A stretch of DNA of 64,000 nucleotides, from the NCBI GenBank assembly GCA_037447605.1, contig CM074810.1:1274880-1338879 (forward strand), read 5' to 3'. The notes beneath the pieces are model-generated. The model saw only the letters and a program-made list of their open reading frames with translations. It did not search any database and was not told where the DNA came from. This stretch comes from Zygnema circumcarinatum SAG 698-1b (Eukaryota; Plantae; Zygnematophyceae). Positions 21,370 through 29,852 of this stretch are shown in pieces; positions within the stretch are counted from its first letter, which is position 1; each line of letters begins with the position of its first letter. The position numbers and the translations under genes were made by a program.

Positions 21370-24136
21370 CTAATACTCCTCAAAACTCTCTGCGGGCTGC
21401 AACTCGTCACTACCGACCAGCCTTCCTGAAAAGTTTCCAGACACAGCGCTGTGCCCCGACCTGAAAGACTCATCGTCATGAAGACGCGAGGAAGGGAGAG
21501 GTCGAATTGGCATGTCAAGATGGCGGTTGATCGCTTCCGCTATGACCTTAGGGTGCGTGAGATGAGGGAGGTGGCCCGCAACGGGGATCATTTCCACGCA
21601 TGCATTGGGGAGGTGGTCGAGCATGTACTGAACGGGCTCCCACGGGACGGCGGCATCTCTTGCTGTTTGCAGGAGGTGGACCTGTTTGGAGACTTGCGGG
21701 ATGATGTAGCGCATGTCGCATGTGAAGATGGTTTTGAGAGTGCTGAAGGCGATGTCAGGGCGGATGAGGAAGAGGGAGCGGCAGAACTCGCGAACGGCAA
21801 CGGAGTCCACGTCTTCGCCCACCACCATGGGAGCAAAGCCTGAGGCCCAGGCCTGCACGGGAGGGGGGGGGAGGNNNNNNNNNNGGGAGGGAAGAAGAGG
21901 GGACACGAAGGGGAGGGAGGGGGAGGGGGCGGAGGGGAAGGGAAGGGAGTGAAGAAGAGAGAGAAGGACGAGTGCGATACAAGGGGTAGGAAGAGAGAAA
22001 GAAGGAGAGGGAAAGAGAAGGGACAGAGACAGAGGTGACGGGAGAGAGAGAGGGAGAGGGAGAACAAGTGGAAGAGAAAGAATGGAAGGAGAAGAGAAGG
22101 GGAGGGTGGCGGAAGAGGGACAAAAAGGGTAGAGGAAGTGGTGCGTAAAGATGGCGAAAAGTATGAGCAAGAGACAGAAGATGGCAGATGGAGAGTGACG
22201 CAACACACGCAATAAGGAAAACGAAGGGAGAGTGAAATAACCACAACGGAACGAGGGAAAGCATGAAACGATAAAACTGAAAAGAGAGCATTAGCCGCTT
22301 CAATGATAATAGAAAGAGAAAGAGAGGGTCGGGACAACTCGCTGTGTAGATCACCTTATAGTTATCCTGCATGGCTGCAAAAACCTGATCGAGCATCTCC
22401 AGAGTGAAGCCTCCCTTGTACCCCGGAGTGTCCAAATACCTGCCACACCCCATCGCCCACTTCACTTATCCACTCCGCCCTGCAAGACCCGCGGCATCTG
22501 TGCATATCTCTATATAGAACACAATTCAGTTCAGTTCACTTCAGTTCAGTTCAATTCAGTCCAATTCAGTTCAGTTCAATTCAGTTCAGTTCAGTTCAGT
22601 ACTGGAACACCTGAACTGCAAAGCAGCAAGCACGCACTGCCAATAAGAGCACAGCCTTCTCCCCCCGTCACCTCGGAGAGGCACCAATCAGAATCATGCG
22701 TTTGAAGACCTCCGGCCGCTCTGTGGACGCAATCACTCCCACCATGCCAGAAACCGAGTGCCCAATGTACGTCATTTCCTGCAGAACCGGAAAGCAAGCT
22801 CTGTAAGAAAGCAAAAACAAAGAAAATAAAGAAGTAGAGAACAGTAATAGCTTCGCCAGTTTGAGTTGCAAGGGAGGGAAATCGAGGGAGCTTCACACCT
22901 CTACTTCGAGCTCGTCCAGCACTTCAAGCAGGTCGTCTGCGTAGCCATGGAGGGTGCTGTAACGCTGGAAGTCGAAGCCCTCCGCATTCGTACTGCACTC
23001 AAAAAGTAACCCAAAAACATAAGAGCGCTGAACCTACCAAAGAAAGAAAAAAAAAAAAGCAGAACTTTCCAACGAGATAAACGAATGGGAAGCTTTACTC
23101 TCTCACCTGTAGGCTCCCATGAGGTCCCACAGAATGACTCTGTACTTGTTCACAAGGTCCATGTCTTCCAAGACATTTCCCCATATCTGTTGGTTGGTTC
23201 CGAACCCGTGGGAGAAGAAAAGAAGCTCCGGCCCCTCTCCCATGGCTATTACGTTATGTCTGGCGAGAGCGGAGCCAGGGGGAGCGTCAAGTTTCAAGGG
23301 CTTCGGAGCCTTCACGGAGGTTTCCATGCTTACGGCCCTGCACGCAATGGTAGTAAAACTCATTCAGTGATCGAATAACGAGACTGTGTGAGAAATCTGA
23401 AATCAGAAATCTGTTTCCTCTGAAATCTTTACTGCGTAACAAGACCAGGATGGAGACTCGAGGATTCTTACGTGGTTGGAACAGGCAAAGGCGTACGAGT
23501 AGTCTCCGGAAGCTCCGCGAGCTTATCCTTCAATTCATCTATGGTGCTCTCCTCTACCTTCACCTCCTTCGCTACCTTCACAACGGCCGGCTTCTCACTC
23601 TCCGCACCATTAAGCTCCACCTTCTCAACGCCCTCCTTCTCTCCAAGCACTACTTCCTCTCCCTTCTTCACCTCCCCAGCCTCGCTGTCAGCGACCTTCG
23701 CCACATCTCCTGCAAGCACTCCCTCTCCCTCCTTCCCCTCTCCCTCCCCGTCTCCCTCACTCTTCTTCCCCTCAGCCTTCCCCAGCACCAGGCGCCGTGA
23801 AGCAGTGTATGTCTTAGAGGAGGCGGAGCGGATGAGCTGCACCGCAACGCTTATCCTCCCCTTCTTCTCTTCTTCGCCCCCCTCCTGCACCTCCCCTTCC
23901 TCCTTCACCTTTCCACCAACCTCAGCCAAATCCCCTGCAACCACCCCCTCCTTCCCCTCTCCCTCTCCCTCCCCCTTCCCCTTCCCCAGCACCAGCCGCC
24001 TTGAAACAATATAGAATCTAGACGACGCAATGCGGATGAGCTTCGCCGCGCTGACCCTCCTCCCCTTCCCCTCCCCCTCCGCCACCACCGCTCCCTCCCT
24101 CTCCTCCCCCCGCTCCGCGCTCACGCACCCTCCCAT
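21370..24136 (-). CDS. KAI2: KAI2/D14-family alpha/beta hydrolase with a predicted in-frame N-terminal acylated extension (~554 aa model)
   Basis: Exons 24136-23472, 23337-23107, 22992-22899, 22778-22672, 22439-22355, 21852-21370 total 1665 nt in frame. Motifs: [35 protein letters not shown] (Ser), [33 protein letters not shown] (Asp), GHLPHL (His). The hydrolase core is secure; exon 1 fusion is inferred from splice signals. Confidence 0.9.
21875..21884. other. Assembly gap (10 N) in a purine-rich intron of the KAI2-like gene
   Basis: Run of N characters between G-rich flanks. Confidence 1.
22524..22600. repeat. (TTCAG)n-type pentanucleotide microsatellite in a KAI2-like intron
   Basis: About 15 imperfect TTCAG/TTCAA units. 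Confidence 0.9.
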
Positions 24137-24279
24137 CGTCTCTCTCCCTCCCCTCTCTCCCTCTCCTCTCTCCCGCCCTCTCCCTCCCCCCTCCGCCGGA
24201 TCTCCCCAATCCGCCCCCGCCCGTCGCCCCGTACAAGCGCCCCCCCGCGGATGAGCCCCGCCGCGTGGGTCGCCGTACT

Positions 24280-25030
24280 TATACACGTGGCGCCCGCCCG
24301 CTGGCCCCGCGATTCGCGGCCGAGCCGTACGGGGCGGCGGAGGGCCGCGCGCGCCGTAAATTGGGGGCGGCGGCAGCGCGGTCCCGCCGGGAGCGGCGGA
24401 CGCGGGGAGGGCGCCACGTGGCCTCCAGGGGGGGACGCATTGAAGGAGAGGGATCCCTGGGCGGCAGAGGCCGTTGGGAGCGGGCTTGGCCCTTATATGG
24501 GATTCGGCCAATGGTTTGGGCGTCACGTGGAAAATGGATGACGTGGAGAGTGGTAATTGGAGGATGATTTGTCCGGACTTGGGATTTTTAGGTCTTCGGG
24601 GGATTCGTGGAACGATTTTAGATTTGTCGCGACGTGAGAGTCGCACGTCGGGGACGCTTCAAGGGGAAAATGCGGGACCGGGGGGCGACGGGAGGATGTT
24701 TTGGGCTGCCCGTTGTCGGTGGGCTACCCGGGCAGGTGGCAAAAAAATGTACTTTTTGAGACAGGTCACAGGGCTGCGAACTGTTCGGGATGCCGCCCGG
24801 TCCAAAAGATGCCTCGGATGCTGCCCGCCCACCCGGGACCGCGGATAAGTTCTAGATCTGCCCGTCTTTATCCGGAAGCTGCCCGCCTGACCGTACGGTG
24901 CCGTTTGTCATTTTCTGGATTTTCAGAGGCAGATGCGGGCGAATCTGAGCTCAAAGTGAAAAGTGGGAAACAAAATAACGGAACGCTACGTGGTGCATAG
25001 AAAACGACGTGCGCATAAGGGGACACGTGG
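24280..25030. promoter_or_regulatory. G-box/ABRE-like cluster upstream of the KAI2-like gene
   Basis: CACGTG at 24284, 24415, 24524 and 25024, plus ACGTGG cores at ~24541 and ~24988. Confidence 0.45.
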
Positions 25031-26994: not shown

Positions 26995-29852
26995 TTAGCC
27001 GTCATCTCCATCAATCGGAGGCCGCGGTTGCCTTGCAGGAGGAGCCACCACCGGAACTTGACTGTCACCGGGAAAGAGGGCCTCAATGATCCCCGGGGTC
27101 TTAAGGATACGCCTTCCAGACATCCTCGGATAAACATCTTCCAAAAAGTAATATGCATGGCCAACAACCATACCCTGCAACAGAGTCACGATGGTCAGCG
27201 TTTCTTCAAAGATAGTGAACTGTACTCTGTGCAAGTAGAAGGAGACCACCAATGCAGAACATGTCATGTCTTTTGCAATGATGATGATGGTGAAGACATA
27301 CCAGCAAGTCGACAATCCACGTGCTATTAAGAATCATGGAGAACCCAAAGAGCACCTGCAACATGAAACGTGGAACAGAAGTCTCCTTATTATCTATGCC
27401 TTTCCATAAACCGACTACGTTATCGAGCAAGCACGTTCGTACTGAACCATGATATAAAGAGCAGAGACTCAATACAGAAGCCCCTTGGATCCTAGATGAC
27501 CTGTGAAGAGATAGCAAATAAATTGACCTCTCTCAAAACCTGCACGCAATCAAAACCAGTGATTAATGGAGCCGCTGATGAAGTAGGATGACTCACCCAG
27601 GGTAAGTAAGGGGCAGTAAAGCTAAAGAGGCCAAGGAAACTCATTTGAACATTGGGATTCCGACGTCCCCAAACGTACACCTGCACAGGAATACACTTCA
27701 CTCTCGGTCAATACTGCTTGGCTGACACCCAAAGTGCTTCAAGTTCAGAAGACAAGAATATTTTGTTTGCTATCATGAAGAAAAATAGCTCAAATGCCAC
27801 AGCAACAATTTTTCTTGGAAAAATACATTTCAAGCACTACAGCCGCTGCGAGGTTGCTCAGACATTTGAGATCAGCACCATGGACGGCAAGGTGGACAAC
27901 ATGATCTACTGCAACTCTCAGTCCATACAAAAGAGCTGTCGAAGGGTGGTGCTAACCAAATTAGAAAAATAGATAGCAAGGCCAAATAGCATAAAAGTAC
28001 TGGTCCAGTAGTGATCAGCTGAACAGACGTTAGAAACCACCACAAGTGAGCACGGACCACGAACATTTATCCAGGAGACACAATGCAGTCAGATTCTGAG
28101 ATAGACCACACTTCCTCTGTGTGAACAGAAAGGATGGAAGAGCCAAAGCACAATAACTGGGGAATCCAAACAAGCGCAGAAACTGCTTTCAGATGCTCTA
28201 TGCGACTGGCCGCTGAAGCACTAAACCGGCCAGTTACAAAGCCGGCGTGAAAAAACTGTCTGAGGGTCCCAGTCAGCACTCCTTAGTTTTACACAGCTCC
28301 CCAACTGCCCGTAAAGCCATGCACGAATAAGAAGTCTGTAGCTCAAATTTAAGGGCGTTGAAAGACTTCGCGAACCGAATTATCATCGTGAGAACAAAAG
28401 AGAAAACTAGTATCACAGTAAGAATAAATCTGCAGGAATTACTAATCCTGATAAAAGTGCCATCATCATCAGAAACACTTTGAAGAGTCTCAAGCACTCT
28501 ACAACTGGCACATGCGTCAGTGAAGTCTGCAAAAAGTCTCCAGGTTTCAGATTCTTGATAGGACTATGTTTGCTTCCAGCTGCTTCTATGACTACAAACT
28601 AGCACTTGAAAAGCTCAATGACAGTATGCACATACAAAGCTGAGCTCGTACAAATTGGCACGCTGATTTCTCTCTGCATCTTGGCTACGGTTAGATTGCT
28701 CGTCGATACGAATCACACAAATGCTATCTGCTAGGTTCGTAAAGTACAAATACTTGATGCACAAACAGTACTGAAGTTAGTGAACGGACCTGATTTGCCC
28801 ACCAGATGTATGCCTTGGCACAGAACAAGATACACTCCTGTCTGAACCAAATTTTGTGTGACAGGCGAAAGAATGTAATTTGCAAAAAATCAGAGGTACA
28901 ACCATTAAAAGGCTGGGAGCATACCATCATAAAGGTGAGCGACGAGCCCAAAAACTGTATATTCACAAAAGGAGCCACCAGCGTAAGAAGAGAGCCGCCA
29001 AAGACGAGCATGTAGAAGAAATCAGCAGTTCGCCCACGGAATGAAGTCTCCTCCAACAATTTGCAATACCGAGATAAGAAGAACATATGAAATAGAAAAT
29101 CGATACCTGCAACAAAAGCATCCTCTTGTTTTAAAGAAGCGCAAACAGCTGCAATTTGGTGGTGTCTTGTCAGAGCACCACCTTGTCTTCATTGTCAGGG
29201 ACTAACTTGGTGGAGATCCTAAAACAAACCTCACTCTGATAGCACTGTACAGAAAAAGCAACTCAGATGCATATGCTGCTGCTTGGACCATCAAACGTAC
29301 TCGAGTCAACCATTTTCTCCTTCACCACGTCATCACAAAAAAGTGAAGCAATTGAAGACTGTAACCATCATAATATGTTCATAATTAGATCTTTGCATCA
29401 GACTAGAAGCTATCGTGAACGTATCGTACGTACCAATGTTACCAAAGAAAAAGAAGTTCGTAAACAATCGCCATATCTCGAAATTCTGAAAGATTAATTT
29501 GGCGTTAAAATACACTTTTAGAGGTGTGATTATCTGCATCAGGGACAGACCTCACAAATACAGTCAGTTGTGAGGACAGAGCTGAACTACTACACATACT
29601 TCAGGATAGAAACTTGTGTATCTCTCTGTTGGGCACGAGCAGGACTATTCAACAACTCGCACGAGGATCCCTCTTATAATCAATAGAAGAAGGCAGGCAG
29701 TGGGATAAACCCATGGAAGGGATAGAAGCTGCCGAGAGGAGAAGGTCGAGCACCTCCAGAGCGCATCCAGCTGTTGTGAGGAACGACAGGGTGAGATATG
29801 ACCGAGTGATGATCGGCATCTGCTTATACCAATCTTCAATGTTCTGCGCCAT
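26995..29852 (-). CDS. DER2: Derlin-2-like ERAD membrane protein
   Basis: [100 protein letters not shown], spread over ~6 GT-AG exons; stop at 26995. Confidence 0.95.

What the first reader, a model, noticed from the sequence alone, without database searches (positions are those of the whole stretch)
21370..24136. KAI2-family hydrolase apparently fused to a dual-acylated, repeat-containing N-terminal domain (membrane-tethered KAI2?)
Seen: ORF 24136-23468 begins MGGCVS, and its stop codon TAA lies inside a canonical donor (AC|GTAAGA at 23471). A YAG acceptor at 23338, 134 bp away and also phase 2, joins it in frame to AVSMETSVK... of the KAI2 core, giving ~554 aa with an intact Ser-Asp-His triad. 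Established: M-G-x-C-x-S is the plant N-myristoylation plus S-palmitoylation signature, and characterised KAI2/D14 receptors are ~270-aa soluble single-domain proteins. Inference: this is a plasma-membrane-anchored KAI2-like receptor or enzyme, which would be an unusual architecture for karrikin/strigolactone-family signalling in an early streptophyte.
Basis: partly seen in the sequence, partly recalled or inferred. Interest (0 to 1): 0.82.

Follow-up and report, generated by a model that had tools for sequence, protein, structure and literature searches.

The report
Lipid-anchor tail on algal KAI2-like hydrolase
In this alga, a relative of the plant smoke/strigolactone receptor KAI2 is made from one spliced mRNA with an extra 222-residue floppy head that starts with a lipid-anchor signal, so it may sit on a membrane; the head has no detectable relative elsewhere and its lipidation is untested.

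Summary
A six-exon minus-strand gene (24136-21370) encodes 554 aa. Spliced RNA contigs from four runs in four studies remove the predicted 134-nt intron (23471-23338). They join the MGGCVS exon in frame to the hydrolase core. One contig runs about 32 nt past the ATG, by its length. The N gap (21875-21884) lies in intron 5 and costs no residues.

The core is not eu-KAI2. It belongs to the Zygnematophyceae-only "NOT KAI2" (NK2) clade of Bythell-Douglas 2017. Its nearest relative is the Spirogyra pratensis "putative D14" (78-80% identity). The Ser338-Asp460-His488 triad is intact.

The head (residues 1-222) is E/G/K/V-rich and modelled without confident structure. It holds two copies of a basic-hydrophobic 29-aa core. 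It has no Pfam match and no hit among 1.84 billion representative proteins. Other NK2 proteins carry different, shorter extensions, and none starts MG..C.

The frame is open beyond chance (3 of 20,000 shuffles). M1 is the first AUG after the TATA box, in strong context. The only cysteine of the head is Cys4.

Membrane tethering is a reasonable inference but untested, and a receptor role is unsupported. This is a new variant of a known kind, of moderate interest.

The parts
21370..24136 (-). Whole coding span of the six-exon gene (554 aa): N-terminal head plus NK2-type KAI2-family alpha/beta hydrolase plus a C-terminal tail of about 45 aa
   Evidence: Model. All five splice joints are seen in RNA contigs.
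23472..24136 (-). Exon 1 (665 nt): residues 1-222, starting MGGCVS. It is E/G/K/V-rich with net charge -8.
   Evidence: The frame is open in 3 of 20,000 shuffles. No Pfam match. No hit in 1.84e9 representatives. AF2 single-sequence model has mean pLDDT 31.8.
24119..24136 (-). Codons for M1-G2-G3-C4-V5-S6: candidate N-myristoylation (G2, S6) and S-acylation (C4) signal. Kozak context is gagacgATGG.
   Evidence: Sequence. Context, and the absence of any upstream ATG back to the TATA box. G2 plus S/T6 plus Cys at 3-5 is expected at 1.4e-4 from the head's own composition.
23981..24067 (-). Repeat core copy 1, [29 protein letters not shown] (residues 24-52): 9 basic, 0 acidic, 11 strongly hydrophobic (L/I/V/F/Y) residues
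23777..23863 (-). Repeat core copy 2, [29 protein letters not shown] (residues 92-120). It shares 19 of 29 residues and 72% of nucleotides with copy 1.
   Evidence: The wider repeat aligns over about 65-75 residues.
23338..23471 (-). Intron 1 (134 nt, GT..AG, phase 2). It contains the TAA that ends the genomic ORF.
   Evidence: Removed in contigs of X1, X2, X3 and X5, with 230 letters on the shorter side.
23107..23337 (-). Exon 2: linker [25 protein letters not shown], then the start of the hydrolase core (RHNV...[11 protein letters not shown]). It holds M226, the likely ancestral start.
   Evidence: The Spirogyra NK2 begins near this point.
22899..22992 (-). Exon 3 of the core
22672..22778 (-). 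Exon 4 of the core, with the nucleophile motif GHSVSG (Ser338)
22355..22439 (-). Exon 5 of the core
21853..22354 (-). Intron 5 (502 nt as assembled, CT-rich low complexity). It contains the assembly gap at 21875-21884.
   Evidence: The joint 21851/22354 is seen in X1 and X5.
21370..21852 (-). Exon 6: lid end and C-terminal half of the core with Asp460 and His488, plus a tail of about 45 aa and the TAG stop
   Evidence: PDB hits: PpKAI2-like E 3e-31, AtKAI2 3.6e-27, D14 1.5e-22, RsbQ 2.3e-8. Alignment.
24278..24294 (-). Putative core promoter: a G-box CACGTG abutting TATAAG, about 150 nt upstream of the ATG
   Evidence: Motif positions. Function is inferred only.

Best explanation
The gene encodes a 554-aa chimeric protein in a zygnematophycean alga, probably a Zygnema (inferred). 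A catalytically competent alpha/beta hydrolase of the NK2 ('NOT KAI2') branch of the KAI2/D14/RsbQ family has gained a young, lineage-restricted first exon. That exon probably arose from GA-rich 5' leader sequence and was then enlarged by an internal tandem duplication.

Shown: one spliced mRNA carries both parts in frame.

Inferred: ribosomes start at the first AUG (M1, strong context). Met is removed, Gly2 is N-myristoylated co-translationally, and Cys4 is then S-acylated. The hydrolase therefore hangs from a membrane on a flexible acidic E/G/K linker of about 220 residues. Two basic-hydrophobic islands in the linker (residues 24-52 and 92-120) may add binding to anionic lipid or to calmodulin.

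The core keeps the Ser-Asp-His triad and most KAI2 pocket aromatics. It most likely binds and hydrolyses a small hydrophobic ester or butenolide-like ligand at the membrane. Whether it signals or only catalyses is open.

M226 (METSVK) also has a strong context and aligns with the start of the Spirogyra orthologue. It probably marks the ancestral start and could still give a soluble 329-aa isoform.
For: - Fused mRNA: the joint 23336/23471 is present in one contig per run in four runs from four studies. The other intron joints are in the same contigs.
- The X5 contig of 1215 nt reaches about 24168, past the ATG (arithmetic on record positions).
- Exon 1 is open in 3 of 20,000 dinucleotide shuffles, against 11 stops in each other frame.
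- There is no other Met in residues 2-225, no ATG between the TATA box at 24283 and 24136, and A-3/G+4 at M1.
- GC3 is 0.71 in exon 1 against 0.68 in the core. Codon choice is G-ending: GAG 35 against GAA 5, AAG 25 against AAA 0.
- MGGCVSA fits G-{EDRKHPFYW}-x(2)-[STAGCN]-{P} with the preferred Ser6. The only Cys in the head is at position 4. The joint chance from composition is 1.4e-4.
- The core is a KAI2-family member, in the NK2 clade with supports 99/92, 98/98 and 97/93. The triad is aligned.
- NK2 is described as Zygnematales-specific in PMC5490202.
- The head has no Pfam match and is modelled without confident structure.
Against: - No protein-level evidence exists: the start codon, lipidation and location are all untested.
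- The head has no relative anywhere. The nearest NK2 proteins lack it. No conservation therefore supports a function. The libraries seem to lack this genome's own proteins (no self-hit), so congeners could not be checked.
- The two repeat cores differ by 10 non-synonymous and 5 synonymous codons, which suggests little constraint.
- Gly-rich, G-rich sequence makes Gly2 cheap: the loose myristoylation pattern alone arises at 3% by composition.
- The first 22 residues are acidic (net -3), which weakens membrane affinity.
- Contigs cannot show transcription starts, so an internal promoter giving only the short form is not excluded.
- ATG coverage rests on one contig whose last 133 letters were not displayed.
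Confidence: 0.55

Rival explanations
1. Exon 1 is in effect a 5' leader. The functional product is the soluble NK2 hydrolase of about 329 aa, started at M226 by an internal or alternative transcription start or by leaky scanning. Any 554-aa product is a neutral, recently arisen by-product with no role for the MGGCVS motif.
For: M226 has A-3/G+4 and aligns with the start of the Spirogyra orthologue. The close JGI relative has an in-frame stop just before its short N-terminus. The head is low-complexity, continuous in composition with the GA-rich leader, lacks homologues and is modelled without confident structure. The repeat copies show about as many non-synonymous as synonymous changes per site.
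Against: M1 is the first AUG, in strong context, on the abundant spliced mRNA, so scanning ribosomes should use it. The 222-codon frame is open at p of about 1.5e-4. No contig lies in intron 1. A variant contig in X3 carries an indel of 9 nt, which keeps the frame. The sole cysteine sits at position 4.
Confidence: 0.25
2. The 554-aa protein is made but is not lipid-anchored. The head is a soluble disordered acidic extension. Its basic-hydrophobic repeats act as a calmodulin- or partner-binding, condensate-forming or regulatory module for the hydrolase.
For: NK2-clade relatives commonly carry unrelated low-complexity extensions at either end with no lipidation motif. Examples are P0031, with about 70 aa at the N-terminus and about 150 acidic aa at the C-terminus, and Closterium proteins with Ser-rich heads. 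The repeat cores have 7-9 basic and no acidic residues. The residues after the motif are acidic.
Against: The N-terminus meets every position rule of the NMT consensus known to me. The single Cys lies next to Gly2, with a composition chance of 1.4e-4.
Confidence: 0.15
3. The spliced form comes from a processed DNA copy or an assembly artefact, and the locus holds two separate genes.
For: The runs are not on record as RNA, and only contigs could be laid, not reads.
Against: All five introns are removed at exact GT..AG borders in four studies. The contig sets of about 40 Mb behave like transcriptomes. Low-depth contigs over introns 4 and 5 look like pre-mRNA. No polyadenylated end or contig end lies between the two parts.
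Confidence: 0.03

Closest known systems
NK2 ('NOT KAI2') clade of the D14/KAI2 family, Zygnematales only (Bythell-Douglas et al. 2017, PMC5490202). It includes the Spirogyra pratensis 'putative D14' I6PFE8.
   Same: The core is 78-80% identical to the Spirogyra protein and groups with it at 99/92. It shares the clade's signature strings: [29 protein letters not shown] and GHLPHLTHP. Extensions beyond the ~270-aa KAI2 core are usual in the clade.
   Different: The 222-aa head with MGGCVS and the two repeats is found in no other member seen here. Those members are 292-480 aa with unrelated ends. The 2017 paper used a 780-nt core alignment and does not use the term 'N-terminal' in its main text.
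KAI2 / D14 butenolide receptor-hydrolases of land plants (for example AtKAI2 4ih1, PpKAI2-like E 6azb, OsD14)
   Same: Same fold family (E 3e-31 to 1e-22 for exon 6 alone). Ser-Asp-His triad. Pocket residues F26, Y124, F134, F157, I193, F194 and A219 are conserved.
   Different: Separate clade. Changes at L142V, A161V, A190L and L218A, and a two-residue insertion after helix 1. Known receptors are soluble single-domain proteins of about 270 aa that act with nuclear SCF-MAX2 (background knowledge). No ligand, MAX2 or SMAX1 link has been tested for NK2.
RsbQ of Bacillus subtilis (1wom), the bacterial relative
   Same: Homologous alpha/beta hydrolase (E 2.3e-8). It works as an accessory to a partner signalling protein.
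   Different: Much more distant, and it served as the outgroup. It has no N-terminal extension.
Dual-acylated plant proteins (for example CBL1 MGCFHS, GPA1 MGLLCS, CPKs MGNCC) and the N-myristoylated E/K/V-rich PCaP1/DREPP proteins. The sequences are recalled from memory.
   Same: Gly2, Ser6 and a Cys at positions 3-5. There is a hydrophilic Glu/Lys/Val-rich region behind the anchor, as in PCaP1.
   Different: No sequence homology: Pfam DREPP is not matched at E up to 0.1. The cargo here is an alpha/beta hydrolase, not a Ca2+ sensor, a kinase or a G-alpha subunit.

Membership tests
KAI2/D14/RsbQ alpha/beta-hydrolase family | Significant sequence similarity to solved KAI2/D14 structures across the core | tested here: met
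   Exon 6 alone gives 3e-31 to PpKAI2-like E, 3.6e-27 to AtKAI2 and 1.5e-22 to D14. The full core aligns end to end.
KAI2/D14/RsbQ alpha/beta-hydrolase family | Catalytic triad Ser95-Asp217-His246 (AtKAI2 numbering) | tested here: met
   S338 (GHSVSG), D460 and H488 align with these positions.
eu-KAI2 (karrikin/KL receptor orthologues) | Phylogenetic placement inside the clade holding land-plant KAI2 and the zygnematophyte KAI2-type proteins | tested here: not met
   The window core lies in a separate 8-row clade (97/93). Spirogloea and Closterium KAI2 group with the land-plant proteins (92/95).
eu-KAI2 (karrikin/KL receptor orthologues) | Ligand-dependent interaction with MAX2 and SMAX1, and a response to KAR or (-)-GR24 | not testable with these tools
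   Needs biochemistry or genetics.
NK2 ('NOT KAI2') clade | Groups with Zygnematales NK2 sequences and shares their diagnostic strings | tested here: met
   Sister to the Spirogyra protein (99/92). The strings match the NK2 rows of the paper's supplementary alignment. The paper's own NK2 sequences were not placed in my tree.
N-myristoylated proteins (NMT substrates) | Met1-Gly2; small uncharged residue 3; Ser/Thr preferred at 6; no Pro at 7; hydrophilic residues 8-11 | tested here: met
   [11 protein letters not shown]. Checked against the PROSITE-type pattern only. No dedicated predictor was available.
N-myristoylated proteins (NMT substrates) | Covalent myristate on Gly2 in vivo or in vitro | not testable with these tools
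   Needs metabolic labelling or an NMT assay.
Dual-acylated (myristoyl plus palmitoyl) membrane proteins | Cys within about three residues of the myristoylated Gly, and membrane localisation that depends on both | tested here: inconclusive
   Cys4 is present and is the only Cys in 222 residues. Acylation and localisation are untested.

The most novel reading that the evidence does not exclude
A member of the KAI2/D14 receptor-hydrolase family in the algal sister lineage of land plants is held at a membrane by N-myristoyl and S-palmitoyl anchors on a long disordered tether. This would be the first lipid-anchored member of the family. It would imply perception or turnover of a butenolide-like or lipidic ligand at the membrane, independent of the nuclear MAX2-SMAX1 route. 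It would also be an example of a targeting signal born de novo from a GA-rich 5' leader.
Probability: 0.4. Interest if true: 0.65.

Novelty: new variant of a known kind. Interest (0 to 1): 0.45.

Why it matters
How KAI2-type signalling arose before land plants is still unclear. Zygnematophyceae carry both a KAI2-type gene and the unexplained NK2 paralogues. An NK2 protein fitted with a lipid anchor offers a concrete test: G2A and C4S localisation, followed by ligand and hydrolysis assays. That test asks where and on what this algal branch of the family acts, and whether family members can work away from the nucleus. It is also a tidy case of a new coding exon, and possibly a new targeting signal, arising from low-complexity leader sequence. 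The head seems confined to one lineage and shows little constraint, so its wider importance may be small.

Tried and rejected
- Word-index protein search with the head: the 8000 candidates scored gave no hit at E up to 0.01.
- Exhaustive HMMER search of 1.84e9 representatives: 0 hits. There was no self-hit either, so this genome's proteins are probably absent from the library, and congeners could not be tested.
- JGI metagenome contig scan with the head: 598 pattern matches, none confirmed.
- ESM Atlas: best score 0.80, which is within noise.
- Pfam on the head and on exon 2: nothing. The DREPP/PCaP idea therefore rests on composition only and was dropped as a homology claim.
- AF2 on the head without an alignment: mean pLDDT 31.8, so no fold search was run.
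Exons were searched apart, and the spliced protein was used only inside scripts.
- The idea that the N gap hides coding sequence was rejected.
- The idea that the apparent indels at 23758-23774 in X5 are variants was rejected. They are repeat copy 1 of the same contig laid on copy 2.
The repeat was characterised in scripts instead.
- Literature: no paper in the library links KAI2-family proteins with myristoylation other than by incidental co-mention. Of the four co-mention papers, only PMC13441764 was opened. There has been no follow-up on NK2 since 2017.
Full report
**1. What is in the sequence**

On the minus strand, ATG at 24136 opens MGGCVS. The frame runs without a stop for 222 codons to TAA at 23470-23468. 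That stop lies inside a donor site (AC|GTAAGA, exon end 23472). An acceptor (GTGCAG|G, exon start 23337) lies 134 nt downstream in the same phase. Joining them reads ...[14 protein letters not shown]... and continues into a KAI2-like core.

I built the whole model in scripts.
- The exons are 24136-23472, 23337-23107, 22992-22899, 22778-22672, 22439-22355 and 21852-21370.
- The coding sequence is 1665 nt and encodes 554 aa.
- All five introns are GT..AG, with lengths of 134, 114, 120, 232 and 502 nt.

**2. The assembly gap**

The Ns at 21875-21884 lie inside intron 5 (22354-21853), 23 nt upstream of its acceptor. Three results show that no coding sequence is hidden there.
- RNA contigs of two runs join 22355 directly to 21852, although only 30 letters lie on the short side.
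- The protein is continuous across that junction when aligned with every relative. It reads DNYK|AWASGFAP, against DNYKVWASGFAP in Spirogyra and SNYKAWCSGFAP in angiosperm KAI2.
- The true length of the intron remains unknown, but this does not affect the protein.

**3. RNA evidence**

The run search found seven holders from four studies, all under one coded organism. I laid four runs, one per study.
- In each run a single high-depth contig skips 23337-23470, which is intron 1. It has 230 letters on the shorter side of the joint.
- Each of these contigs also lacks intron 2; introns 3 and 4 are removed in the same contig in X1, X3 and X5, and intron 3 in X2 (its intron-4 joint is listed only with a 26-letter side). 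It continues into exon 1 as far as 23940 in X1 and X5, 23852 in X3 and 23768 in X2.
- The tool skips the low-complexity stretch 23941-24198.
- The X5 contig is 1215 nt long. Its position 987 lies at 23940, and the loose end starting at position 1053 matches 24006-24035 exactly. The contig is therefore collinear with the genome and should end near 24168, about 32 nt upstream of the ATG. Only 30 letters of that loose end were shown.
- No contig lies within intron 1.
- Low-depth contigs lie over parts of introns 4 and 5, as expected of pre-mRNA.

The runs are not on record as RNA. However, contigs that lack all five introns at exact GT..AG borders in four studies, from contig sets of about 40 Mb, are transcriptomes in practice.

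**4. Is exon 1 coding?**

Points in favour:
- Frame 0 has no stop, while the other two frames have 11 each. Only 3 of 20,000 dinucleotide-preserving shuffles are open in frame 0.
- GC3 is 0.71, against 0.68 in the core.
- Codon choice is strongly G-ending: GAG 35 against GAA 5, and AAG 25 against AAA 0.
- M1 is the only Met in residues 1-225.
- No ATG lies between the TATAAG at 24283 and 24136.
- The context gagacgATGG has A at -3 and G at +4.
- A variant contig in run X3 carries a 9-nt insertion behind 23781, which keeps the frame.

Points that weaken a functional reading:
- The two repeat cores differ at 10 non-synonymous and 5 synonymous codons, so constraint is weak.
- The GA-rich composition of exon 1 continues into the leader upstream of the ATG.
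- M226 (METSVK) also has A-3/G+4.

**5. What the core is**

- Exon 6 alone matches solved KAI2-family structures: PpKAI2-like E at 3e-31, AtKAI2 at 3.6e-27, D14 at 1.5e-22 and RsbQ at 2.3e-8.
- The best database relative is the Spirogyra pratensis "putative D14" I6PFE8 (P0001), at 80% identity over exon 6 and 78% over the core.
- Next come a JGI environmental sequence (P0002), several Closterium proteins, a 480-aa EukProt protein (P0031) and a Logan protein (P0033).
- In a maximum-likelihood tree of 38 rows rooted on bacterial RsbQ-like proteins, the window core pairs with Spirogyra (99/92). It then joins P0002 (98/98).
- These sit in an 8-row clade (97/93). This clade is separate from the one holding Spirogloea and Closterium KAI2 and all land-plant KAI2 (92/95).

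This matches the description by Bythell-Douglas et al. 2017 (PMC5490202) of a second, Zygnematales-only type, "NOT KAI2" (NK2). They describe it as having "highly divergent characteristics" and found no counterpart elsewhere. The NK2 rows in their supplementary alignment show the same strings as this core. Their sequences were not placed in my tree.

The triad S338, D460 and H488 aligns with S95, D217 and H246. Pocket residues F26, Y124, F134, F157, I193, F194 and A219 are kept. L142V, A161V, A190L and L218A differ.

That fits the two-type picture, but I did not check it.

The organism is therefore a zygnematophycean alga. A Zygnema is my inference from the nearest relative and the genome size scanned. 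It is not a tool result.

**6. What the head is**

- Residues 1-222 are E 40, G 35, V 28, K 25 and A 20, with net charge -8 and a single Cys.
- The head contains a two-copy repeat of about 65-75 residues.
- The 29-aa repeat cores are [29 protein letters not shown] and [29 protein letters not shown]. They share 19 of 29 residues.
- They are the only basic, hydrophobic islands in an acidic sequence.

Searches for relatives of the head found nothing:
- no Pfam match;
- no hit in the word-index search;
- a best score of only 0.80 in the ESM Atlas;
- no hit among 1.84 billion representatives;
- no confirmed match in JGI metagenome contigs.

The absence of a self-hit shows that this genome's own proteins are not in those libraries. 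Absence from congeners is therefore untested.

AF2 without an alignment gives a mean pLDDT of 31.8, which is compatible with disorder.

**7. Is the architecture shared?**

NK2-clade proteins do tend to carry extensions, but the extensions are unrelated to each other.
- Spirogyra has 24 residues before the core, starting MKVPSS.
- P0002 has about 42 residues, starting MAGVENQ. Its contig has an in-frame TGA immediately upstream of the ATG.
- Closterium proteins have Ser/Thr-rich heads of 30-75 residues.
- P0031 has about 70 residues at the N-terminus and an acidic C-terminal tail of about 150 residues.

None begins MG..C. The profile search covered lengths up to about 620 aa and found no other long fusion. 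So the lipidation-type head is specific to this lineage among what could be seen. M226 aligns with the Spirogyra start, which suggests that exon 1 was added upstream of an ancestral start.

**8. The lipidation inference**

[11 protein letters not shown] satisfies the NMT substrate rules as I know them: Gly2, a small uncharged residue 3, Ser6, no Pro7, and a hydrophilic stretch at residues 8-11. Cys4 next to the myristoyl-Gly is the usual site of S-acylation in dual-acylated plant proteins. This is background knowledge, not a tool result.

Drawing residues 2-7 at random from the head's own composition gives these rates:
- the loose PROSITE-type pattern in 3.2% of draws;
- that pattern with S or T at position 6 in 0.9%;
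- G2 plus S/T6 plus the single Cys at positions 3-5 in 0.014%.

This argues that the motif is not a by-product of Gly-rich sequence. It does not show that lipidation occurs. The acidic residues that follow the motif would weaken electrostatic membrane binding. The basic-hydrophobic repeat cores could compensate, or they could bind calmodulin or another partner. Both ideas are speculative.

**9. Verdict**

The fusion is real at the mRNA level, and the motif is a good candidate.
- The core is NK2, not KAI2, so receptor function cannot be assumed.
- The head is an orphan with weak constraint.
- Nothing here tests start-codon use, lipidation or localisation.
- In the library searched, no opened paper describes a lipid-anchored member of the KAI2/D14 family (four papers merely co-mention the terms, one opened), and none found follows up NK2.
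- I file this as a new variant of a known kind, with moderate interest.

Noticed in passing
window 24289, 24420, 24529 (minus strand), with TATAAG at 24283: Three G-box/ABRE-type CACGTG motifs lie within 400 nt upstream of the ATG. One abuts the TATA box. This hints at light- or ABA-type regulation of this NK2 gene.
   Followed up: no
window 24245-24446: Low-depth RNA contigs (depth 11-15, against about 420 for the gene) in runs X2 and X3 lie upstream of the putative TATA box. They could be a minor long-leader isoform, which would include the uATG at 24440 and its 53-codon out-of-frame uORF. They could also be promoter-associated or antisense RNA.
   Followed up: partly
window 23771-23782: The contig of run X3 (a different study) carries an in-frame 9-nt insertion behind 23781 (adds Ala-Leu-His), plus one non-synonymous and one synonymous change. 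This is probably a strain difference within repeat copy 2 of the head.
   Followed up: partly
window 22520-22620 (intron 4): A pentanucleotide-type array (ACTGA/ATTGA units, 'actgaactgaactgaattga...') lies in intron 4. Several RNA contigs break here with loose ends that lead to other sequences, so the array is probably repeated in other transcribed loci.
   Followed up: no
window 21885-22330 (intron 5): A long CT-rich low-complexity tract (TCTC/CCCT runs) fills most of the 502-nt intron and ends at the assembly gap. Its complement is like the GA-rich exon 1 and leader. The gap is probably an assembly failure in this tract.
   Followed up: no
window about 26995-29086, minus strand: ORF fragments such as ...[24 protein letters not shown]... 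look like exons of a Derlin (DER1-like ERAD) gene upstream of the NK2 gene. This was recognised by eye only.
   Followed up: no
proteins P0003-P0005 and P0031 (other Zygnematophyceae NK2-like proteins): The N-terminal extensions of Closterium NK2-like proteins are Ser/Thr/Ala-rich and poor in acidic residues, like organelle transit peptides. P0031 has a TKRKAP stretch. NK2 proteins of different lineages may be sent to different compartments.
   Followed up: no
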